A DNA stretch of 64,000 bases, taken from the NCBI GenBank assembly GCA_033442325.1, contig JAWQFM010000012.1, positions 436,122-500,121 of the forward strand. Direction: 5' to 3'. Within the stretch, counting starts at the first letter, position 1; each line of letters starts with the position of its first letter. Below the pieces are notes generated by a model that saw only the letters and a list, made by a program, of their open reading frames with translations, searched no databases and had not been told where the DNA came from. Of the stretch, positions 5,297-30,355 are shown one piece after another. Origin of the DNA: Salpingoeca rosetta (Eukaryota > Protista > Choanoflagellata). The position numbers were made by a program, and so were the translations under genes.

Positions 5297-8200
5297 ATGG
5301 GGTCGCGCGCCCCATTCCCACCACCGGGCTTCCAAGGCCTCGCCGGTGACCAAGCAGCACCAACACAGAGCAGTCAGTCTCGCCCACACTACTACTTCCA
5401 ACACGACTACAATAATGGTCGCAATCCAGCCACCACTGCTCAGCAGCAGCAGCAGCACCGCCACCACCACCACCAGCAACACCTGCGTGCGAATGGTGGA
5501 GGTTTGGCGTCCGACCAGCACTCCAACCCTTCCGCGTCGTCCACCTCCATCCCTTCCTACTCCGGCCTGCTGCAGCCCAAGACCCCAACAGCAGATTCAG
5601 CTGCAGCACCATCCACAGACCCCAGACTTAGCGATATCAAAGCTCGCCTCTCCAAAGTGCGTGTGCGCATCTGTGCGTGTATGCGTGTTTGTGCGTGTGC
5701 GTGCGTGTGTGTCAGTACCTGTTTGTGTGTGCGAATGTGTTCCTACACCTTGCTCGTGAACATACATGGCTTGGTTGGTGTGATGTCAACTCGTTACGAC
5801 AACGATGACCACAGCATGTGATGTCATGTGGCTGCACTCGTTGTCATGCCCCACAGCTGCCTGCACTGGCAACTGCTTGTACAAATCACGCACAACCACA
5901 CACAACCACACACAACCACAAGTTCACGAGTGACTTGCACCCCCTCCCCTCAACACACACAACACACACATACATGCCACGAACCGTCCACGTGCTCAGG
6001 TGAATGTGGACGAAGGGCAGGAACCCGGCATGTCGCGGTTCGATGCTTTGTTGCGCAGCTTTTCCGAGCGCCCGCCAAACCTGTCGTCGTTTGATGTCCC
6101 CATGTCGCAACTCGGCAGCTTCCTCGACGATCGGCAGAAGCAAGACGCCGACGCGTTCCTGAGCAACCGCTATGGCGCAGACACAAGCGGTCGGCGACAT
6201 GAAGGCGGTAGCAGTGGCAACCACGCAAGTGATGATGACGACGAAGATGGTGATGATCAACGGGATGGCGAGGACGACGAGCAGCGCATGTCGTTCAGCG
6301 GGCTTCGTGATTTGCCAGATCCACACGCTGCTGCACCAGAACCAGAACTCTCTGCGCTTCAAAAACAACAGCAGCAGCAGCAACAGCGACAGCGACAGCA
6401 GCCATCCAGTGACAGCACTCAGCAGCGTCACCACCACTTATCCACCCTGTTGTCGTCAGATGTGAGTTGGCAGCAACACGCTGGTGGTGCTGATGGCCAC
6501 GCCAACACATCACGGGACCTTGGTGCAAACCTCGCTCGCTCCATGCACGCGTTTCTCTCCGGCCAGGACTCCGTGGATGGGCTGCTGCGTAGCATGGTGA
6601 ACAACACCAACGACAACACGGCTGTGAGCGACGCTGTTCACGCAAGTGCTGCCTCTGATGTCGTGCATTCATCGCGCCGGTCACAACAGCACATGCAGCG
6701 CCAGCAGGAACTCGCCGATGCTTCCAGCAACACGCTTCGCCACAACAACCAAGACAGTGACATTAATGGCGGTGGCGATGATGGTGACGATGGTGGTGAC
6801 GATGACGATGACGGAATGTCGTGGCAGCGCTTGCTGGCTGATGAGCAGGAGGAGTCAACAACAGCTGGCTCCCGACGGACAGAGGGCGAGTTGACAGCAA
6901 GTATCGCCAGCCTTCACTTTCCACGCTCGCTCGAACAGGAAACGATGTGGCTTAGCCGACACCTTGGCGAGCTTGGTGAGGGACAGGACAGCCTGACCGC
7001 TGCTGCCTCCATGTTCTCCACGGCACAACGCACACGAACGCAAACACACACCACACGCGCGTTGATATCAGCATCTGCCTCGTCGCAGCACCACCAGCGC
7101 GGCGGTGGGTTTGGGCACGAGGTCACCCACGATGATGATGATGATGATGATGATGAGGAGGAGGAGGAGAGGGAGAGGGACGAAGAAGAAGGAAGAAAAG
7201 GAAAACAACAACAACAACACCAACAACAACAACAACAACAACAACAGCAACCACAGAGACATCGCCACAATGAACGGGAACATGACAGTACTGGTGGTGG
7301 TGATGATCGCAACAATGGCCAGGGCTTCTTCTTTGACGCCCCGCTCTCGGTGCTCTCCGAGAAACCACTCTCCTCCGCTCTCTCCACGGCTTCAAGCCAC
7401 TCTGTATCCCACCAGGTACGACACGCGTGTGCATGAGCCTATGTTTGTGTGCGCGTGTTTGTGAACATGTGTACATGTGCGCGCCTTCCGCTCGTTTCAT
7501 ACCCATTACGCTTTGAAGGATTGGAAGCACCCTCTTCTTTCATACGTTTCACCTTCACCTCCATCACTCATTGGCACCTTTGCTCGCCACATCTTTACTC
7601 ACCGCATCCTTACTCGCCACCCCTCACCACCTCCGCCGACGATGGCGCTGTGCAGGATGCGAGCGGGTCCCGCAACTACTCTGCACAGGCAAGCACGATT
7701 GTGCGTCGACTGCTGGATCAGACGGCCCAGCGCGATGTGCAGCGCCAGCGCAGGTCCTCCCAGCAGCTGCGACACGATCTCCTTGAGGAGTCCATTCCCT
7801 GGTCTGACACGCACCACGACAGCAACAACAGTAGCACGCACAACAATGACGACGACGATGACAGCAACAACACGCCGTCGCCAAGCGCCACATCGCCACT
7901 GCACACGCCTCGTGGTGGGCGCGGGAGTGGCGGTCGTGGCGTTCGCACGCCTGACAGCGCAACGCACGCGCACATGACACCACAGCAGCACCACTATGAC
8001 CATCAGCAGGACAAGCACTTTGGATTCAATGACAGCCAGACATTCAACGACACGCAATACGGGTTTCAGTCGTTGCTGGACATGACAGACCGGTCAGCGG
8101 CTTCCTCGCATCCAACATCAATGCTCTCTGCCATTGCAGAGGGTGTGCCCTCACCAACAAGCGCTGTATCGCCATCGTCGCCTGCTAAGGCACGAGCACA

Positions 8201-20819: not shown

Positions 20820-20895
<76 letters not shown>

Positions 20896-21211
20896 GTTGC
20901 AGTCACAGTGTGTCGCTGCACAGCTTGCATGTGGCCTGTACACCCGCACAGCAGCAGAACAGGTCAGCGGGAGGGAAATGGATTGGAGCAGAAAGAGCAG
21001 CGTGACGATTGAGGGAAATGCGAGAACGGAACAAGCGAAACTTGTTGGCGTTTGCGAGTGGGTGTGACGTCAAGGAAGTGACGTTGGTACAATTGAAACG
21101 CAAGGCGGTGGTGCATGTGTGCCTGTGTGCCTGTTTCCCTTGCACCACCACCAGCCAGCCAGCCAGTTTGCACGTCGCATGGCTTGCTTTTTCTTTTGTG
21201 TGTGCGTATGT

Positions 21212-22970
21212 TTAATCTTCATCGTCATCATCAGAGTCTGAACCGTCACTCTCATCATCGTCATCGTCGGCCAGCTCTCTTCGGGCAAACTGCACAGAGG
21301 GGTTGTTGAAGTGAGATGGCAGTCAGTGGCCTTCCGAGGTTTTTAGCAACACACACACACACACGTACACAAATATAAAAACAAATACAACAAATACAAC
21401 CAGATGCACGCCCACTCTGACACTACCTCACGCACACACCCTCATTCTCACGCACGCACACACACATGCTTACCTTGATGTTAGTCTTCTGCTTTGTTTG
21501 TTGGGCGACTTGGCCAAGGAGCCGCTTCAGCTCACGCTCGTCAACCTGAGAGGCGCACGAGCACGGTGCAGGGCATCGACGTGGCGTGTGTGAGTCGAGA
21601 ATGACGAGAATGACGACAGCTCGGAGAAAGGGGAGGTAGAGGAGGGATGGCCGAACACAATACAAGGTGTGACAATGCAAGCAGAGCAGCTACAGCACAT
21701 TTAATGGCCACGTTACACGGCTGCACACGCTCAAACACTGGCACACGCACACATACGCGCAACAAGTCTGCGTGCATTCATGTACTCGCTCACAAACGCA
21801 CATGCACCCGCGCACACGTAGCACACACGCACACACCAAAAAAAAAAAAAAACATACACACATAACACACGCACATAACATATGCACGCACACACGCAGA
21901 CAAGAGCATGACCTTGCCGTGGATTTGACCGTTCTGCGCCATGCGGATGAGGAGGTTTTCAACAAGGGCAGCGGTTTCGGGCTTCACAACAGCAATGCTG
22001 TTCACTGACGAAACAAGGTCGAGCATGGGCCAGCAGCAAGGAAAGAAAGAAAGGAAGGTAAGTCAGCACACGGTACAGTCCACGCAAATGGTGTGCACAC
22101 GCAACAAGGAATATAACGCAACTCATACACACACACACAAACACATACACACGCACACACACACAACAACAACTTAAACAACAACAACTAAAACAACTTA
22201 AACAGCAACAACAACAACTTAAACGACAACAAACAATACTGTGCGCAGTTAGGGGTTGCTTACGTCGTGCGCGTGCTGATTGTGTCATGATGGAGCCAAG
22301 CATTTGATTCTTCATCTCCTCCATTTGCCTACAAAGTGGCGAATGCGAGGTGTTGTGTGTGAGTGTGTGTGGGTGTGTGTGAGTGTGTGTGTGAGTGAGT
22401 GTGTGAGTGTGAGTGTGTGTGTGTGTGTGAGTGTGTGTGTGAGTGTGTGTGTGAGTGTGGGTAGTGAGTGGAGTATGGATGAGTTGTGTGCACAGATACC
22501 GATGACCAATCAAGTGCGCTGCAATATGTACACGCGACGACAAGGCGTCCAACGCAACCACGCACCGCTTCTGCTCCTCTTGCTGCTGACGCTGCTTCTG
22601 TAAGCCCGTGTCGGTATGTTGGCAGTGCGCACATGGTTACGGTGTGAGTGTTGTTGACTCAAGTGGGAGTCGGGATGCAAGCGCACACAAACCAAGAACA
22701 TGTGTATAGCGAGGATATACCAAAGCAAACACACATCGCAAACACACACACACACAGCAAACACAAACACATAAAACAAACACGCACACACACACGCACA
22801 CGCATACACACGCGCACAAACACGCGCGCACAGAGCAATCACACAGCAAACACACACACACATACACAAACACACCAAACACAAACAAACACCAGGCATA
22901 ATACCCTTTGCGCCTGCATCTGGGCAAGGCGCGGGTCCTGTTGCTGTTCCTCTTCTCCTGGACGCTCCAT
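21212..22970 (-). CDS. PDCD5: Programmed cell death protein 5 (TFAR19 family), ~6 exons
   Basis: Spliced translation: MERPGEEEQQQDPRLAQMQAQR / KQRQQQEEQKR / QMEEMKNQMLGSIMTQSARAR / LNSIAVVKPETAALVENLLIRMAQNGQIHGK / VDERELKRLLGQVAQQTKQKTNIK / FARRELADDDDDESDGSDSDDDDED*. This is the typical PDCD5 core with an acidic tail. Confidence 0.9.
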
Positions 22971-23753
22971 GACTGACGATTACGGTTTGTCTGTTTGTGT
23001 GTCGGTGATGAACGTCGTGCAGTGTGGTGTGGTGTCGTTGTTGCGATAGCACAGTGTCACATCATGTCGTCACAACATCAAATGCCAATCATCACGTCGT
23101 CGTCGTCGCACTCACATCATCACGTCACACACACACACACACACACACACACACCACATCGCATCTGTCCGCCCTTCCACCACTTTCAGCCCACAACGCT
23201 TACTCTTGCAGCTGTTGTCTCTGCTCTTGCGCACTTGCTCCTTGGCAAATGTCTGTGGACAATTACAAGAAGATATTCGAAAATTCTCTACACGCCGCAT
23301 TTCTTGTGCCTCGATGCATGCTGCACACCAACAACAACCTACCTTCCTTCCTTCAACACACACGACGCACACTTCTTCCTCACCCCTCATTGCCGTGCCA
23401 TCGCCGTTGGGAGTTGGTGCGTTTGATAAATGCATGCACAAAGGGAGGTGGGGGAGGAGGCACACAGCACGCACCCCCTGCCCACGCTCCTGTTTCCCCG
23501 GCTTGCACGGGCCAGCTTTTCAGACACGGCTGAGTCGTTGTCCATCACAGAGCCCTGTTTCCTCACCTTCGTTCCGCCCCTGACCACCCATCTCGCTGTG
23601 TTTTGATTTTGATCGTGCGCGCGCTCGCAGGCCTTTTTGGCTTTGTCGTGATCGGAGCACGCACACTCACATACGGAGAGGCTCAACAACAAGCGCCATC
23701 CTCATTCCCGTCGTGAGCCGTCGCCCTTCTCTGGCAGCCCGGCATATTCTTGA

Positions 23754-23793
23754 GCGCGTACCGAAAGCTTGTACTCAAGCTTTTGGTACACGC
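23754..23793. promoter_or_regulatory. 40-nt imperfect inverted repeat (18-bp stem, TACT loop)
   Basis: GCGCGTACCGAAAGCTTG-TACT-CAAGCTTTTGGTACACGC; one C:A mismatch and one G:U pair. Confidence 0.5.
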
Positions 23794-23815
23794 CACCGCC
23801 CTCTTGCTTCCTACA

Positions 23816-23860
23816 ATGCTGGACGTTTTCACACTCGCGTGTCCTCCCGGAGTTAGCTGA
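23816..23860 (+). promoter_or_regulatory. Candidate upstream ORF (14 aa, MLDVFTLACPPGVS*) in the ATP13A leader
   Basis: ACAATGC start context; the only plus-strand ATG I found between ~23437 and the ATP13A ATG at 24417. Confidence 0.4.
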
Positions 23861-24416
23861 CACCCGCTCAACGCCAACGTTCAACCCCTCCGCTCTTCTT
23901 CTTCCGTCCCTCTCGCTCCATCTTCTTCTTCTTCTTCGACCATCGTCCCCTGTTTTTCTTCAAACGAAGGCCGAGTCCCGCTCAGGAACATTCCTAAGAA
24001 CCCCCTCCCTGTCTCACCCTTCCACTCCCCTCGACGTTTGCGCACTCATAGCGTTCACCGCCATCCTCCTCCCCTTTTCGCATTGTAGCGTGTGCTGTTA
24101 ACCTTCTTCCTTGTTGATCGTACTCGCTGTTTTCAAGCGGTTGCTTCTTGTTCTCAAGCATCCTGGTCTGCGTGTGGTTTTGTGTTCACATCACACGCCA
24201 AAACGCAGTGACACAGCACATCACACACATTGTGACTCAACTTTCACAGCTAGTCTCTTTCCCCCTGCATCACACACGTGTGTGCACAACTACTTGTTCT
24301 TCCTTCCCTCCTTCACGTCGAGGCTTGCCACTGAGCGGCCCATCTCGCTCACACGCCTTGACCCCTTTGCCTTCACTTTACTGCGACAACTACTGCTCTC
24401 CCGCTTGCTCCCCCAT

Positions 24417-26064
24417 ATGGCCAAGTCGTATGGCACGGCGCACGCGCCGCTGGTTGGCAGCTCACCAGATCCAGCCGACTCTGTGTGGAGGCGCCCCTAT
24501 CGGGTTGCGTGCGACGTTCTCCCGCACGCTGACTTTGAAGACGATGACCCGCCCATCTACGTGAGTCCACCCGGCACTGTATGGTGTGTGTGTGTGTGTG
24601 TGCGTATTGTGTTGTGTTGTGTTGTGTTGTGGTGTGGTGTGGTGTGGTGTGGTGTGGTGTGGTGTGGTGTGGTGTGGTGTGGTGTGGTGTGGTGTGTCTG
24701 TGTGTATTGTGTCTGTGTCCGCGGGTCTGCTTGCAGAGCTTGCTCCCCCCCCCCTCTCATCCCATGCCCACTCTTCTGATCTCTCTCCAGTGCATGTGGG
24801 AGACCATGACGTGGCTGTCTCTTGCCCCCCCCCTGCCCCTCAACCTTGATCCCCCAGCTCACACCTGCCGCCCAATACCCCACTCACTGCCTCAACCCCT
24901 GCTGCCTCTGCCCTCCATCCCAGGTTGACTGCCGGCGGTATGTGACCGGCAAGCAGCTGTTGTACTGGCTGCTGACGCTGCTCACCGTTGGGCTGTTGCC
25001 GCTCGTGTGCAAGTGGAAGCCGACGTGGTCTGCGATGCTGCAGACCACCTGCTGCCGTGTTGGCCGCGCGGACGTGCTGGTGGTCACCCGCCGCAGCAAA
25101 GGCCAGGGCGTGGAACGCGTGCGCACATACACACCGGCAGCACCCAACGCCGCCAAGATGATTGCCTTTGAGCATCGCCATGTGCGGTTTGTGCTGGACA
25201 TGGACACGTCGACGTTTGTGCGCGTGGTCGATCTCTCGCAGCACACGACCATTGCCAAGCTGCACGCCCTTGTACACAAGCCGAGGTGGGCGGCTTACCA
25301 GCCAGGAGGGGGAAGAGGGTGGTGATGTTGTTGGTGTTGAGGCTGTTGCTTCCGGACTTTTACGGACTGCACACGCTTGCCGCTCGCTGCCGCTGCTTCA
25401 ATCATTCGAAGCACACGCCCTGACGCACCTGCGCTTCCACACACCAACTCACTTCACCCACTCACTCAACACGTGGATACATGCATGTGCGTGCGTGTGT
25501 GTGTGTGCGTGGCCAGGGATGTGGAGGTGTCTGAAGACGAGTTTCTGCACGGTGCAAACAGCATCGATGTTGAGGTCAGCGCTGCTGCACATACAGTGGG
25601 CGATCGTGCGCTGCACCATGGCGTTCATGTGCATGGCATTCCGCACCATTGCGCTTCTGATCCGTCCGCGTTTGTCTTTGTTTGCCCATCCAAACGCACG
25701 GGCGTGCACATGCAACATTGCGCGCACGCACAACCACACAACCGCCCTCACTCACGTACTGATTTGCATACATTCGCGGGCGCAGGTCAAGTCGTACTTT
25801 GCGCTGCTGATTGACGAAGTGCTGACGCCGTTCTATCTGTTCCAAGCGTTTGCAATTGGGCTGTGGTGCATTGACGAGTACTACTACTACGCCGGTTGCA
25901 TCTTCTTCATCTCGCTCGTCTCGGTTGTCCTCACGTTGGTGGAGACGCGGCGAAACGCAGAGAAACTGCACGACATGGCCGCATTTCACGCGCGCATCAA
26001 GCGCATCCACCCCTCGCACGACCCCAACACCGACGTTCTCACAGAGGTATGCGTGTGAGCGTGT

Positions 26065-26115
<51 letters not shown>

Positions 26116-27910
26116 GGGGGGGCGAGTGAATGGGTGTGTGCCTCTTGCGTACGTCTGTTTGCCCTTGATTTTGAATCGGCTGGTCATGCTTTGAGGCCGC
26201 GTATTCTCATCCAACCTTCCTTGCTTCCTTCCTTGCTTCCTTTCCTCCCTTTCCTCCCTTTCCATCCTTTCCATCCTTTGCTTCCAACAGGAGGTGGATG
26301 CGACGCAGCTGCTGCCTGGCGACATGGTTGAGATTGAGGAGGGTGCCGAGATGCCGTGTGACGCCGCCATTGTGCTGGGCGGGTGTCTTGTCAATGAGTC
26401 CATGCTCACCGGCGAGAGCGTGCCTGTCACCAAGACATGTCTGCCAACAGATGCTGTTGAAGTGGAGCATGAGTACGCACCGACGACACACAGGGCGCAC
26501 ACGCTCTTCCGCGGCACATTTGTCATGCAGCGCCGCACCCCTGTTGTGCGGGCGATTGTTGTTCGCACGGGGTTCAACACGAGCAAAGGACAGCTCGTGC
26601 GGTCTATCTTGTACCCGAAAGGAACGCGGTTCCGCTTCTACGAGGACGGCCTCAAGTTCCTGATGGTGCTGGGCGTGCTTGCGCTGGCCGGGTTTGCGTA
26701 CACGATTGTCGTGCTGCAACGTCACGGCGTCTCTGTCGACCACATTGTCGTCCGGGGCCTCGACCTCATCACCACCGTACGCCAGCACCTGCTGGCGCTT
26801 GTGTGTGTGTGTGTGTGTCTGTGTCTGTGTCTGTGTCTGTGTCTGTGTCTGTGTCTGGGTTATGTCTGCTAGTTGTGTGCCTGAACTTGTGTCTGTGTGT
26901 CTGCATTTCGTGTGCGGTTTTGCACACTTCTTCGCTCGCGCGCTCGCTCACACCAACTGCAACCTCCTTCCTCTCCTCCTCCTTCTCTCTCCTTCTCTCT
27001 GTCAGGTTGTTCCCCCTGCACTCCCTGCTGCAATGACGATTGGGACCATGTACGCGCTCGCCCGCCTCAAGAAACAGAAGATCTTCTGCATCTCCCCGCC
27101 CCGCGTCAACGTACGAACCGCACTCACCACGCACATGTTGTGCGGTGTGGTGGCCACTGTCATCACACAACTCGCTTTTACACACACTCACACACTCACA
27201 CACTCACACTCACTCTCACTCTCACTCTCTCACACACTCACACATCCACACCCGCATGTCGACAGGTGGCCGGCAAGCTGAAGCTGTTCTGCTTTGACAA
27301 GACGGGCACGCTGACCGAGGACGGGCTGCACCTGTGGGGCATGCGCGATGTCGACACGACCACGCGCCGATTCGAGGCCCTCAACCAGTCTGGCACGCTG
27401 TACGGTGCACCCTCGGCGCTGGGCATGCTCGGAGCGTGTGCATCGTGCCACTCGCTGGCGGTGCTGAAGAAGAGCGCCGACACGACGATGCCTGAGCTGC
27501 TGTCGATGCTGGAAGAGGCAGACCCAACGCCTGGGCACCGCACGCTGCGAGACGGCGCACCCGCGTGGTCGCGCAACGCCAGCACAACGGGCAGCAGCGC
27601 TGGGAGCGCCGTCGGCAGCAGTGTCGGCAGCACGCGCAGCAGCCGGAGCGGCAGCGGCCGCGGGTCGTCGCCGGCAAACGCATCGGCACACGTGCACACG
27701 AACCACGCGCTGCCGCGGCAGGACCTTGTTGGCGATCCGCTTGAAGTGCAGCTGTTTGAGGCAACGAGGTGGCGGCTGTCTGAGCCTGGCGACGCAGAGC
27801 ACGCGTACGTGCCGTCCATCGCTGCGCCGTACACGTATGTGCACCCGCCCGATGACCACGACGCCGCGTTTGTGCTGCAGTCGCGCAAGAACAAAGGCAA
27901 CGGCAAGGAC

Positions 27911-27946
<36 letters not shown>

Positions 27947-30355
27947 CACACGCGAGGACGACGCCATGCGCGATACACCGAATCCTCCGCTGATGGCTGC
28001 AGCCACAACGACATCGGTGCCTGTGACGATGATGGTGATAGCGATATCTGGGGCAACGGCCATAGCGGCACAAAACGGACAACAGCCTGGTCGGATTCCA
28101 CAGCGCCAACCAGCGGGCACGGCAGCACCAGCGGTGACGTCAACAACGACAACAGCGGCGCTGATGGCGATGGTGCGGAGGAGCATGCTGCCAACGCGGG
28201 CAGCACCGCCACCAACAGCCCTGCGTCACGCGTGCATCCGTGGAACCAAATGACGTCGTCTGGCCTGGCTGTGCTGAAGCATTACACCTTTTCCAGTCGC
28301 AACCAGCGCATGGCTGTGCTCGTTGGCTCGTGTGTGAGCACGCCAGCGCACGGGGTGCAGGAAGGCCCCGTGTACTGTTACGTCAAGGGCGCCCCAGAGC
28401 GCGTGGCCAAGCTGTGCGACCCGGCCACCGTGCCCACGGACTTCCACGAGCAGCTGCGCACATACACGCAGCAGGGCCTGCGGGTGCTCGCTGTTGCTGG
28501 GCGGGAGGTGCCTGGGTCGTGGGCCGAGGCCAAGGCGCTGACACGAGACGTGATTGAGAGCAAGCTCACGCTACTTGGCTTCACCATCTTTGAGAACCGA
28601 GTGAAGCCGCGCACGGCGGCCACCATTGAGAAGCTGTCCAACGCGTGCATCCGCTCCCTCATGATCACGGGGGACAACATCCTCACGGCGTGCAGCGTGG
28701 CCAAGACGTGCGGCATGGTGCCGGAGCAGGGCGTGCTGGTGCAGGCGCACGTGATTGACGCGCGCGATTCGCAGTGGCGCATGCTGCACAGGCCAGCAGA
28801 GGCGCCCCTGCAGCTGTGCATGAACGGCAGTAGCACTGGTGGTGGTGATGGCAGCCGACACGGACACAGCAGCGCTGCTGCTGACAGGCGTGATGACGAT
28901 GCTGGCGATGATGACTCATACGATGACGACGACGACGACGATGATGATGTCGCCTATGGTGGAAGCAGCAGCAGCAGCAGCAGCAGCAACCGAGACAAGA
29001 ACAAGAGGCGGGGCAAGAACGGGGCAGCAAAGACATCATCGTCCTCATCATCGCAATCGTCATCATCGTGCACGTCGTCCAGCGACAGCCGCTACAAGCT
29101 GGTGCTGGAGCTGATTGACACTGACGCTCGCGTGGACGTTGGCATGGAGCCGGATGGCCTGCAGTTCGTGCGCTTCACCAAGCTTGCAGGGCAGCCACCG
29201 GCTTCCACGTGGCGCAGCAAGCACCATGCGCGCGCGCCCAAGATCTCCATTGCCGTGTCTGGCGCCGAGCTTGCCATGCTGCGCAAGCACTGCTTTGAGG
29301 ACTACCAGCGGCTGATTGTGAGCGGCACGGTGTTTGCGCGCATGTCGCCTGACCAGAAGACGCAGCTCATTGAGGACCTGATTGAGCTCGGGTACTGTGT
29401 CGGCATGTGTGGTGACGGCGCCAACGACTGCGGGGCGCTCAAGGCCGCGCACGTTGGCGTGTCGCTCTCGGAGGCGGAGGCGTCTGTTGCGGCGCCGTTC
29501 ACCTCCACGGTGCCGGACATTGACTGCGTGCAGACGCTGATTCGCGAGGGTCGGTGTGCGCTGGTGACGTCGTTCAGCTGCTTCAAGTTTATGGCGCTGT
29601 ACAGCTTCGTTGAGTTTACGAGCGTGCTCATCCTGTATTGGATTGACAGCAACCTGGGCGACTTTGAGTACCTGTATGTGGATCTGTTTGTGATTCTGTC
29701 GCTTGCGGTGAGCATGGGTCGCACTGGCCCGTACACCAAGCTCTCCAAGCGCCGCCCTGCCGGCTCGCTCGTCACCGCCATCATCATTGTGTCGCTGCTG
29801 ATGCAGATCAGCGTGCACATGCTGTTCCAGGCTGGCGCGTCCATCCTCCTGCAGCAGCAGTCGTGGTTTGTTCCGCTCAAGCCCGATGCCCACAAGGACA
29901 ACATTGAGGGCTTTGAGAACACGGTTGTGTTTCTCGTCGCCAACTTCCAGTACGTGTGGGTGTCGATTGCATTCAGCATCTCCAAACCGTTCCGCGCGGG
30001 CTTGGCGTCCAACCTGTGGTATCTTGGCGTCGTGGTTGTGCTGCTTGCACTGGACGCGTTCCTCGTGCTGCACCCGTCCGGGTGGCTCGCCGATGTGCTG
30101 CAGATTGTGCACCTGCCCAGCCCGCGGTTCCGGCTGTGGCTGCTGGCGCTCGCTGTGGGCAACTTCATTGTGAGCTACTCGCTTGAGCGGCTGGTGGTGA
30201 TGAGCAGTGTGTTCCGCCAGGCTGTGCGGGCGCTGCGACGAAAGCGCGCGTACAAGAACAAGTACAAGGAGGTGGCCAAGGAGGTGATTGTCTCGGATTG
30301 GGCCGTGGGCAAGGTCGCCATGCGCATGGACAGCGGCACAGACAGCACCGCATGA
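24417..30355 (+). CDS. ATP13A: P5B-type ATPase (ATP13A2/ATP13A3-like, probable polyamine transporter), ~7 exons
   Basis: N-terminal [26 protein letters not shown]-domain LTGES, P5B-specific TM4 VVPPALPAA, phosphorylation site [39 protein letters not shown], six C-terminal TMs; stop at 30355. Confidence 0.95.
24630..24692 (+). repeat. (TGTGG)n pentanucleotide microsatellite in ATP13A intron 1
   Basis: Tandem GGTGT units. Confidence 0.9.

What the first reader, a model, noticed from the sequence alone, without database searches (positions are those of the whole stretch)
23816..24419. Candidate polyamine/eIF5A-sensing uORF in the leader of a P5B polyamine-transporting ATPase
Seen: from ~23437 to the ATP13A start (24417) the plus strand has only one ATG, at 23816, in good context (A at -3). 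It encodes MLDVFTLACPPGVS* and is followed by ~555 pyrimidine-rich ATG-free bases. Known: P5B ATPases (ATP13A2/3, yeast Ypk9) transport polyamines. Polyamine-pathway mRNAs are often controlled by short stalling uORFs (fungal HOL1 MLLLPS*, mammalian AMD1 MAGDIS*, the AZIN1 PPW motif), and Pro-Pro-Gly is an eIF5A-dependent motif. Inference: this uORF, with PPG followed by a terminal S-stop, may be a polyamine-responsive translational switch on an ATP13A gene, which I do not know to have been described.
Basis: partly seen in the sequence, partly recalled or inferred. Interest (0 to 1): 0.72.

Follow-up and report, generated by a model that had tools for sequence, protein, structure and literature searches.

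The report
Conserved MAGDIS-like uORF before polyamine transporter

Summary
On the + strand, 23437-24416 has one ATG (23816, A at -3), encoding MLDVFTLACPPGVS*, followed by 556 ATG-free, 68% pyrimidine bases. The gene is S. rosetta's only P5B ATPase (PTSG_07173).

RNA from four runs in three studies shows a 5' end near 23347-23373, a leader intron (23417-23630) that removes the ATGs at 23430 and 23434, and a continuous leader to the start codon. The uORF is therefore the only uATG in a mature leader of about 856 nt.

P5B leaders of three other choanoflagellate-clade loci, not otherwise alignable, each carry a short uORF with the same ending:
- TARA relative: ...RGVS* TAG-CAC
- Monosiga brevicollis: ...PSIS* TGA-CAC
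- L105: MEGDVS*

An unplaced eukaryote has MEADVS* TGA-CAC. Only 0.125% of control short ORFs end [DGS][VI]S. Codons differ while residues are kept. PPG is not conserved.

The ending resembles AMD1's MAGDIS*, which stalls ribosomes at termination in response to spermidine. I read this as a new member of that class, on a polyamine transporter. The polyamine response itself was not tested, and only the S. rosetta leader has transcript evidence. An earlier scan note (s1-436006) reports another conserved choanoflagellate uORF, before the PRL phosphatase gene, elsewhere in this genome.

The parts
23347..23416 (+). Leader exon 1 of the P5B ATPase mRNA. The 5' end is approximate; the exon holds no ATG.
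   Evidence: the contig of run X4 starts at 23347, and that of X9 at 23373 with adapter sequence at its end. The exon is joined to 23630/23631 in X4, X9, X21 and X22. ATGs at 23314 and 23318 lie 29-33 nt upstream of the earliest contig end.
23417..23630 (+). Intron in the 5' UTR (GT..AG). It removes the ATGs at 23430 and 23434.
   Evidence: joint 23415>23630 (cut +1), with 12 reads in X22 and one contig each in X4 and X9. One search shows the splice sites gagttG|GTGCGT ... CTCGCAG|gcct. Depth inside the intron is about 3% of the leader depth in X22.
23631..24416 (+). Non-coding part of leader exon 2. Coverage is continuous up to the start codon.
   Evidence: contig pieces run 23630-24560 without gaps in X4 and X9, and stranded raw reads (X22) give depth 9-43 across it; ten runs X4-X13 of three studies hold 0.82-0.83 of the query words, which is the share left when 23437-23629 is missing.
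23816..23860 (+). The uORF: ATG, 13 further codons and TGA, encoding MLDVFTLACPPGVS*. It is the only uATG of the mature leader and sits about 256 nt from the 5' end.
   Evidence: A at -3 is at 23813.
23843..23851 (+). Pro-Pro-Gly codons. This is an eIF5A-dependent pause motif in yeast, but it is not conserved in relatives.
   Evidence: PPG is listed as a pause motif in PMC5499558. It is absent from the uORFs of L103, L003, L105 and L078.
23849..23863 (+). Conserved core: Gly-Val-Ser, the TGA stop, then CAC. This gives a stop with C at +4, the weakest termination context.
   Evidence: The stop-anchored alignment A5. The UGAC context is described in PMC7089771.
23861..24416 (+). ATG-free, pyrimidine-rich spacer of 556 nt between the uORF stop and the main AUG.
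   Evidence: Equivalent ATG-free spacers measure 330 nt in L103 and 261 nt in L003.
24417..24560 (+). First coding stretch of the P5B ATPase (48 codons, ending ..EDDDPPIY).
   Evidence: N-terminus of P0001. One search shows the joint 24560>24924.
24561..24923 (+). First intron within the CDS (GT..AG), containing a GT-rich microsatellite.
24924..25286 (+). Coding exon carrying the P5-ATPase N-terminal domain.
   Evidence: PF12409, E = 1.9e-10; contig pieces run to 25286 and then continue into the next exon; this is the only PF12409 match in the genome.
26897..30352 (+). Large open frame holding most of the ATPase core. Its 3' end (30352) is the gene's stop codon; where the exon begins was not mapped.
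   Evidence: best matches are solved ATP13A2 structures (E = 2.6e-130); 100% identity over 90% of the query to PTSG_07173.

Best explanation
Shown: the 14-codon ORF at 23816-23860 is a genuine uORF of the mRNA for S. rosetta's single P5B (ATP13A2/3-type) polyamine-transporting ATPase. It is the only AUG in a spliced leader of about 856 nt, and it has A at -3. Its C-terminal tripeptide and stop context are conserved at the amino-acid level in the P5B leaders of other choanoflagellates.

Inferred mechanism: most scanning 40S subunits start at this AUG. The nascent chain ending x-Val/Ile-Ser, together with a weak stop (C at +4), slows peptide release. This parallels the AMD1 uORF MAGDIS*, where spermidine prolongs a termination stall and Ile-5 is essential. 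A ribosome held at the stop blocks following scanners and loses the ability to resume scanning, so fewer ribosomes reach the main AUG 556 nt downstream. When polyamines are low, release is fast and the long ATG-free spacer allows efficient reinitiation. The result would be negative feedback of cytosolic polyamines on synthesis of their own transporter.

My odds for each step:
- A conserved, functional uORF: about 0.8.
- It acts through the nascent peptide at termination: about 0.55.
- The signal is polyamine: about 0.45.
For: 1. Transcription. Stranded raw reads and contigs from four runs in three studies place the 5' end near 23347-23373. They splice out 23417-23630 and cover 23631-24560 without a break. 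Ten runs hold exactly the word share expected for the spliced leader.

2. ATG depletion. The S. rosetta leader has 1 ATG against 4.7 expected (P = 0.03), and the M. brevicollis upstream stretch has 1 against 4.35 (P = 0.03).

3. Conservation.
- L103/L104 (marine metagenome, closest relative; its exon 1 ends [12 protein letters not shown]): MHLAFTPTISFARGVS* TAG-CAC, 330 nt before the start.
- M. brevicollis L003: MSSQLLCGVFHPSIS* TGA-CAC. It is the only ATG in the 493 nt before the true start at 5669.
- L105: MEGDVS*. The gene sits inside the choanoflagellate P5B clade (SH-aLRT 96 and 91).
- L078 (unplaced P5B): MEADVS* TGA-CAC.

4. Background rates. Among control short ORFs, 8 of 6380 (0.125%) end [DGS][VI]S, and none of these lies in a P5B leader. 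Of 12,448 ORFs on both strands, only two fit M-x-x-D-[VI]-S*, and both sit just upstream of a P5B start. Stop followed by CAC occurs in 1.4% of 3066 control short ORFs.

5. Peptide-level selection. The leaders share no alignable nucleotide sequence. Codons differ while residues are kept: GGA/GGT, GTT/GTG/ATT, and Ser as AGC/AGT/TCC.

6. Precedent in the literature.
- MAGDIS directs spermidine-dependent stalling. It still does so when fused behind a long N-terminal tag and in a plant extract, and the I5L change abolishes it (PMC7038982).
- Ribosomes stall at the MAGDIS stop codon in cells (PMC7089771).
- UGAC is the most readthrough-prone stop context.
- The yeast polyamine importer HOL1 is controlled by a stalling uORF (PMC11550727).
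Against: - There is no functional or ribosome-profiling evidence for any of these uORFs.
- Transcript evidence exists only for S. rosetta. The TSS is unknown for L003, L103, L105 and L078, and L078 and L105 have further uATGs upstream.
- S. rosetta, the TARA relative and M. brevicollis have Gly or Ser, not Asp, at -3. From memory of Mize et al. 1998, which I did not check here, Asp is critical in MAGDIS.
- The uORF lies about 256 nt from the cap, not 14 nt as in AMD1.
- One further leader from an unplaced organism (L107) has two uATG ORFs without the motif.
- About 40 fungal P5B loci show no such uORF. In that scan the plain [VI]S ending was at background rate, so the significance rests on the more specific patterns, which were partly recognised after the fact.
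- The RNA around the uORF has no unusual fold (z = 0.74).
Confidence: 0.45

Rival explanations
1. The uORF is conserved and functional but is not a polyamine sensor. It would act as a constitutive brake, or as a reinitiation gate responding to eIF2 or general translation status, or it would couple the mRNA to nonsense-mediated decay. On this reading the conserved ending tunes termination and reinitiation efficiency, or senses another ligand.
For: A short uORF followed by a long ATG-free spacer (261-556 nt) is the classical layout for reinitiation control. The uORF stop lies far upstream of exon junctions, which is a typical NMD trigger. Asp at -3 is missing in three of the five uORFs.
Against: Generic brakes do not need a conserved peptide ending, yet residues are kept here through synonymous and codon-family changes. 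The ending matches the one class of peptide known to respond to spermidine. The gene product handles polyamines.
Confidence: 0.25
2. One reading: Pro-Pro-Gly in the uORF causes an eIF5A-dependent elongation stall that reports polyamine/hypusine status.
For: PPG is present at 23843-23851 and is an eIF5A-dependent pause motif in yeast (PMC5499558). Only 0.5% of composition-matched random short ORFs contain PPG.
Against: PPG, and any diprolyl motif, is absent from the equivalent uORFs of the TARA relative, M. brevicollis, L105 and L078. In this C-rich leader 16% of random short ORFs carry some 'polyamine-like' feature. PPG could still add a lineage-specific pause.
Confidence: 0.07
3. A tolerated, neutral uORF. 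Its presence and its resemblance to the uORFs of relatives are chance products of pyrimidine-rich leaders.
For: ATG depletion is only moderate under a dinucleotide null (P = 0.03). The motif definitions were refined after seeing the data. One unplaced relative lacks it.
Against: The background for the shared ending is 0.125% per short ORF, and 1.4% for stop+CAC. Four further leaders with few candidate uORFs each show the ending. Untuned global and C-anchored alignment scores already put S. rosetta versus the TARA relative in the top 0.4-0.7% of controls, and versus M. brevicollis in the top 2%.
Confidence: 0.1
4. The uORF encodes a 14-residue micropeptide that acts in trans.
For: Conservation is at the peptide level.
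Against: Only the last three residues and the stop context are kept. Length varies from 6 to 16 codons and the N-terminal parts are unrelated, which fits a nascent-chain effect inside the ribosome and not a folded or binding peptide.
Confidence: 0.03

Closest known systems
AMD1 (S-adenosylmethionine decarboxylase) uORF MAGDIS*
   Same: Both are AUG-started short uORFs on a polyamine-pathway mRNA. Both end in a beta-branched residue followed by Ser and stop. The L105 and L078 versions are hexapeptides, ME[GA]DVS*, with the same Asp-(Ile/Val)-Ser ending. In MAGDIS only the C-terminal residues matter: it stalls even behind a long N-terminal fusion, and I5L abolishes stalling (PMC7038982). This fits the variable N-terminal parts seen here.
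   Different: The S. rosetta, TARA and M. brevicollis versions have Gly or Ser instead of Asp at -3 and are 14-16 codons long. The uORF lies about 256 nt from the cap rather than 14 nt. The regulated gene is a transporter, not a biosynthetic enzyme. No stalling has been shown.
Yeast HOL1 polyamine importer uORF (MLLLPS*)
   Same: A short stalling uORF gives polyamine feedback on a polyamine transporter, and the terminal residue is Ser before the stop (PMC11550727).
   Different: HOL1 is an MFS transporter, not a P-type ATPase. Its conserved motif is Pro-Ser-stop, which is absent here.
AZIN1/ODC upstream conserved coding region (uCC, PPW/PS endings)
   Same: The polyamine-responsive pause lies near the end of an upstream frame. 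S. rosetta has two adjacent prolines near the C-terminus, as most uCCs do (PMC2811004).
   Different: uCCs start at near-cognate codons and are longer. Here the diproline is not conserved in relatives.
Conserved-peptide uORFs in general (e.g. plant AdoMetDC S-uORF, fungal arginine attenuator peptide)
   Same: Peptide-level conservation across species whose leaders are otherwise unalignable, and action presumed to be in cis.
   Different: Those peptides are longer and engage the exit-tunnel constriction. Here only the last three residues and the stop context are kept, as in MAGDIS.

Membership tests
P5B polyamine-transporting P-type ATPase (ATP13A2/3, Ypk9) - the downstream gene | P5-ATPase N-terminal domain (PF12409) | tested here: met
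   (E = 1.9e-10 in exon 24924-25286); the only such match in the genome.
P5B polyamine-transporting P-type ATPase (ATP13A2/3, Ypk9) - the downstream gene | Closest solved structures are ATP13A2/P5B, far ahead of P5A | tested here: met
   ATP13A2 at 2.6e-130, fungal P5B at 1e-120, P5A at 3e-55.
P5B polyamine-transporting P-type ATPase (ATP13A2/3, Ypk9) - the downstream gene | P-type core motifs TGES, DKTGT and GDGAND, and the TM4 motif PPALP (P5B) rather than PPELP (P5A). The assignment of the TM4 signature is from memory. | tested here: met
   in P0001, TGES at 315, PPALP at 440, DKTGT at 483, GDGAND at 1188; no PPELP.
P5B polyamine-transporting P-type ATPase (ATP13A2/3, Ypk9) - the downstream gene | Polyamine transport activity | not testable with these tools
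   Requires a biochemical assay.
MAGDIS-type polyamine-responsive termination-stalling uORF (AMD1) | AUG-initiated short uORF present in the mature mRNA of a polyamine-pathway gene | tested here: met
MAGDIS-type polyamine-responsive termination-stalling uORF (AMD1) | Ile (or Val) at -2 and Ser at -1 directly before the stop | tested here: met
   The five uORFs end V-S*, V-S*, I-S*, V-S* and V-S*. Leu is not tolerated in MAGDIS (PMC7038982).
MAGDIS-type polyamine-responsive termination-stalling uORF (AMD1) | Asp at -3 | tested here: not met
   S. rosetta and the TARA relative have Gly, and M. brevicollis has Ser. Asp is present only in L105 (MEGDVS*) and L078 (MEADVS*).
MAGDIS-type polyamine-responsive termination-stalling uORF (AMD1) | Cap-proximal position (about 14 nt from the 5' end) | tested here: not met
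   About 256 nt from the mapped 5' end.
MAGDIS-type polyamine-responsive termination-stalling uORF (AMD1) | Peptide sequence, not nucleotide sequence, conserved among species | tested here: met
MAGDIS-type polyamine-responsive termination-stalling uORF (AMD1) | Spermidine-dependent accumulation of peptidyl-tRNA / ribosome stall at the stop | not testable with these tools
   Needs in vitro translation, toeprinting or ribosome profiling.
HOL1-type uORF | Conserved Pro-Ser-stop ending | tested here: not met
   The endings are GVS*, GVS*, SIS*, DVS* and DVS*.
AZIN1/ODC uCC | Near-cognate (non-AUG) start and conserved adjacent prolines near the C-terminus | tested here: not met
   The start is AUG. 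PP occurs only in S. rosetta.

The most novel reading that the evidence does not exclude
P5B (ATP13A2/3-type) polyamine transporters and the biosynthetic enzyme AMD1 are governed by the same kind of minimal ribosome-arrest peptide (x-Asp/Gly/Ser-Val/Ile-Ser-stop). On the transporter this sensor predates the split of choanoflagellate lineages. The hexapeptide ME[GA]DVS* may be its ancestral form, and it may persist in animal ATP13A2/3 mRNAs. This would give a direct translational link between cytosolic polyamine level and lysosomal polyamine export.
Probability: 0.3. Interest if true: 0.75.

Novelty: new member of a known kind. Interest (0 to 1): 0.6.

Why it matters
ATP13A2 (PARK9) and ATP13A3 are the main known routes by which endocytosed polyamines reach the cytosol, and how their synthesis is matched to polyamine level is not established. 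A conserved MAGDIS-like uORF on the orthologue in the closest living relatives of animals would extend uORF-based polyamine feedback, known for AMD1, AZIN1/ODC and yeast HOL1, to P5B transporters. It would show that a three-residue arrest signal can be reused on unrelated mRNAs. It also gives a directly testable element in S. rosetta, a genetically tractable organism, and suggests looking for the same ending in animal ATP13A2/3 leaders.

Tried and rejected
- **C-terminal contigs.** The contigs of the close relatives P0002, P0003, P0006 and P0007 (L001, L002, L004, L005) hold only the 3' half of the gene and no leader.
- **EukProt orthologues.** The choanoflagellate orthologues P0099, P0005 and P0118 are EukProt entries with no nucleotide record.
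- **Word search.** A word search with an N-terminal alignment returned 8 hits, none of them an identifiable choanoflagellate. The contigs fetched from them were an arthropod-like and a mollusc-like animal (L006-L009), an unplaced intron-rich eukaryote (L091/L092) and a fungus (L093).
- **Metagenome scan.** It gave 80 loci, almost all distant and fungus-like. None has the uORF.
- **Big protein search.** It yielded L103, L105 and L107.
- **L107.** This unplaced locus has uATG ORFs ending ...SASS* and ...FVLF*, without the motif.
- **L032.** Its ...LDIS* ORF lies inside the fungal CDS out of frame, so it is not a uORF.
- **S. rosetta ODC leaders.** The two ODC-like gene leaders show no related uORF.
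- **RNA families and fold.** Rfam gave only sub-threshold noise in the leader, and there is no unusual fold around the uORF.
- **MAFFT on the peptides.** MAFFT does not anchor the peptides at the stop, so that alignment is uninformative (A4).
- **Tool and library failures.** The genome search failed twice with a protein query. The HOL1 paper PMC8500938 is not held.
- **Joined sequences.** These were used only inside local scripts: leader exon 1 plus exon 2 for ATG counts, and the two L105 ORF products for a placement tree. Searches used single exons by reference or the database record P0001.
Full report
**What is in the window**

The + strand between 23437 and 24416 holds a single ATG, at 23816, in the context cctacaATGC. 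It encodes MLDVFTLACPPGVS followed by TGA. After the stop come 556 bases with no ATG and 68% pyrimidines, up to the ATG at 24417.

Shuffling gives 8.7 ATGs expected for 23437-24416 under a mononucleotide null (P about 0.001). For the mature leader, a dinucleotide-preserving null gives 4.7 expected (P = 0.03). The depletion is real but moderate once the pyrimidine bias is allowed for.

**The gene**

- The exon at 24924-25286 carries the P5-ATPase N-terminal domain PF12409.
- The large open frame 26897-30352 matches solved ATP13A2 structures at E = 2.6e-130, with P5A ATPases far behind.
- The protein database identifies the gene as PTSG_07173 of Salpingoeca rosetta, 1501 residues, starting MAKSYGTAH at 24417.
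- It has TGES, DKTGT, GDGAND and the PPALP motif.
- It is the only PF12409 gene in the assembly.

**Is the uORF in the mRNA?**

Yes. I laid two stranded raw-read RNA runs of 2026 and RNA-derived contigs of 2017 and 2024 on 22800-25300.
- The contigs begin at 23347 (X4) and at 23373 (X9, with adapter sequence at the end).
- They join 23415/6 to 23630/1 across a GT..AG intron, then run unbroken from 23630 to 24560.
- From there they splice to 24924.
- In X22 the junction is supported by 12 reads, and the intron body has about 3% of the leader's depth.

Ten runs (X4-X13) from three studies hold 0.82-0.83 of the words of 23437-24561. That is the share left when the intronic part is absent.

The intron removes the ATGs at 23430 and 23434, and leader exon 1 has none. 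The mature leader is therefore about 856 nt, with one uAUG about 256 nt from the 5' end.

On the other strand, a PDCD5-like gene (PF01984) starts at 22970. It has its own 5' UTR intron (22991-23203), and its transcripts end at about 23234-23240. The two genes thus share a bidirectional promoter of about 100 bp.

**Reaching relatives**

This was the hard part. Contigs of close relatives held only the 3' half of the gene, and three choanoflagellate orthologues exist only as EukProt proteins.

Monosiga brevicollis could be fetched (L003). Its annotated model lacks the first coding exon. The true start is the ATG at 5669/5678, in an exon ending DEDPVVTV|gt. This aligns with the EDDDPPIYV|gt end of S. 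rosetta exon 1.

It gave N-terminal fragments whose contigs I fetched with the remaining look-ups.

**What the relatives show**

- **L103/L104.** Two marine metagenome contigs of one organism, the closest relative of S. rosetta found. Exon 1 ends [12 protein letters not shown]|gt and exon 2 begins VDCRQFVG. There are two ATGs between the preceding gene and the start at 888. One is an 89-codon ORF far upstream. The other, at 507, reads MHLAFTPTISFARGVS* TAG-CAC, has A at -3, and is followed by 330 ATG-free bases.
- **M. brevicollis.** The only ATG in the 493 bases before the start is at 5360, with A at -3. It encodes MSSQLLCGVFHPSIS* TGA-CAC.
- **L105/L106.** Logan contigs of a GC-rich organism whose P5B sequence falls inside the choanoflagellate clade (SH-aLRT 96 for the clade, 91 for the subclade with S. 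rosetta). MEGDVS* lies about 100 nt before a plausible start codon.
- **L078.** An AT-rich metagenome contig with a P5B gene (PF12409 and E1-E2 ATPase) on a long, unplaced branch. MEADVS* TGA-CAC lies 129 nt before the start.

Anchored at the stop, the five uORFs end G-V-S, G-V-S, S-I-S, D-V-S and D-V-S. Four of the five stops are followed by CAC.

**Is that chance?**

- The leaders themselves cannot be aligned. The only significant nucleotide match between S. rosetta and L103 is in the coding end of exon 1.
- The shared residues are written with different codons: Gly GGA/GGT, Val GTT/GTG, Ile ATT, and Ser AGC/AGT/TCC.
- With untuned scores, S. rosetta against the TARA relative is in the top 0.4% (global) and 0.65% (C-anchored) of 3066 control short ORFs. 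Against M. brevicollis the figures are 2.3% and 1.9%.
- Among 6380 control ORFs of 5-25 codons, drawn from all fetched loci and the window on both strands, 8 (0.125%) end [DGS][VI]S. None of these lies in a P5B leader.
- Stop followed by CAC occurs in 1.4% of 3066 control short ORFs.
- Of 12,448 ORFs, only two fit M-x-x-D-[VI]-S*, and both are the uORFs just described.

Some of these patterns were defined after seeing the data, so the nominal probabilities are too small. Even a generous correction leaves the shared ending well beyond chance.

**Limits of the comparative evidence**

- In the scan of 48 mostly fungal P5B leaders, the plain [VI]S ending occurred at background rate (3 of 283). The element is therefore not general to P5B genes.
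- One further unplaced leader (L107) lacks it.
- Transcript evidence exists only for S. rosetta.

The Pro-Pro-Gly motif is a genuine eIF5A-dependent pause motif in yeast (PMC5499558). It is also rare by composition, at 0.5% of matched random ORFs. But none of the four other uORFs has it or any diproline. HOL1's Pro-Ser-stop (PMC11550727) is absent too.

What is kept is a beta-branched residue, then Ser, then a stop with C at +4. This is the ending of MAGDIS*, the AMD1 uORF that stalls ribosomes at its stop codon in response to spermidine (PMC2811004; PMC7089771). Three published observations fit:
- MAGDIS still stalls when placed behind a long N-terminal fusion, and it does so in a plant extract.
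- Changing Ile-5 to Leu abolishes stalling (PMC7038982). This matches both the variable N-terminal parts and the strict V/I seen here.
- C at +4, and UGAC in particular, is the least efficient termination context (PMC7089771).

The hexapeptides ME[GA]DVS* match MAGDIS in length and in its Asp-(Ile/Val)-Ser ending. The S. rosetta form departs from it by having Gly for Asp at -3 and by lying about 256 nt from the cap.

**Most likely mechanism (inferred, not shown)**

Most scanning subunits initiate at the uAUG. Release of the chain ending Val-Ser at the weak stop is slow, and slower still at high polyamine. The stalled ribosome blocks following scanners and cannot resume scanning, so less transporter is made. 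At low polyamine, release is fast and the long ATG-free spacer allows reinitiation at 24417. PPG may add a lineage-specific pause.

The main rival is a conserved uORF that gates reinitiation or NMD without sensing polyamines.

**Literature**

No paper in the held library links a uORF to ATP13A2 or ATP13A3 regulation, and none discusses uORFs in S. rosetta.

I used it only as a hint that relatives' leaders could be reached, and did not test its claim.

Joined exon sequences were used only in local scripts: ATG counts on the spliced leader, and a placement tree for L105. No joined model went to a search tool.

Noticed in passing
window 21200-23240 (- strand): A PDCD5-like gene (PF01984 dsDNA_bind) is transcribed divergently from the P5B gene. 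Its start codon is at 22970-22968, its 5' UTR intron spans 22991-23203, and its transcripts end at about 23234-23240. That leaves a shared promoter of about 100 bp. In the TARA relative (L103:1-152) the PDCD5-like last exon lies upstream on the same strand as the P5B gene, so the pair has been inverted in one lineage.
   Followed up: partly
L003:5669-5812 (Monosiga brevicollis): The public model MONBRDRAFT_25515 (P0100) starts at an internal Met (L003:6001) and misses the first coding exon (MERMALHNKSQ...DEDPVVTV|gt).
   Followed up: partly
L098, reverse strand (G000:C19, about 229000-229400): The S. rosetta AdoMetDC gene (first exon MDNNDFFEGQEKLLEVWFKPP) is preceded by two short ATG ORFs, ...WKVPR* and ...SIGPA*. 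Both have a penultimate proline, the feature that PMC2811004 reports for non-vertebrate AdoMetDC uORFs. There is no MAGDIS-like uORF, and the TSS is unknown.
   Followed up: no
L105:447-467 and L078:160-180: In both hexapeptide uORFs the Asp-Val codons GAT-GTG create an internal out-of-frame ATG. In L078 it reads M* directly; in L105 it opens a 26-codon frame.
   Followed up: no
window 23808-24311: In run X21 the depth is low over 23808-24143 (0.8-2.9) and high at 24228-24311 (24.6), while X22 is even (9-43). This may be sampling noise at low coverage, or a shorter-leader isoform that skips the uORF.
   Followed up: no
window 26897-30352 (P0001 residues about 560-780 and 1010-1100): The S. rosetta P5B protein is about 300 residues longer than its relatives because of low-complexity inserts (poly-Ala, poly-Ser, poly-Asp, Gly/Ser-rich) in the cytosolic domains.
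   Followed up: no
window 24111-24416: The main reading frame stays open for 102 codons upstream of the ATG at 24417. In this stop-poor, pyrimidine-rich sequence that is not evidence for an N-terminal extension. The annotated protein (P0001) starts at 24417, but the RNA data cannot show which start is used.
   Followed up: no
window 24575-24702, 23119-23163, 20820-20895, 22340-22460: Long GT/AC-type microsatellites, including (GGTGT)n in the first CDS intron. Reads were cut there by the repeat filter.
   Followed up: no
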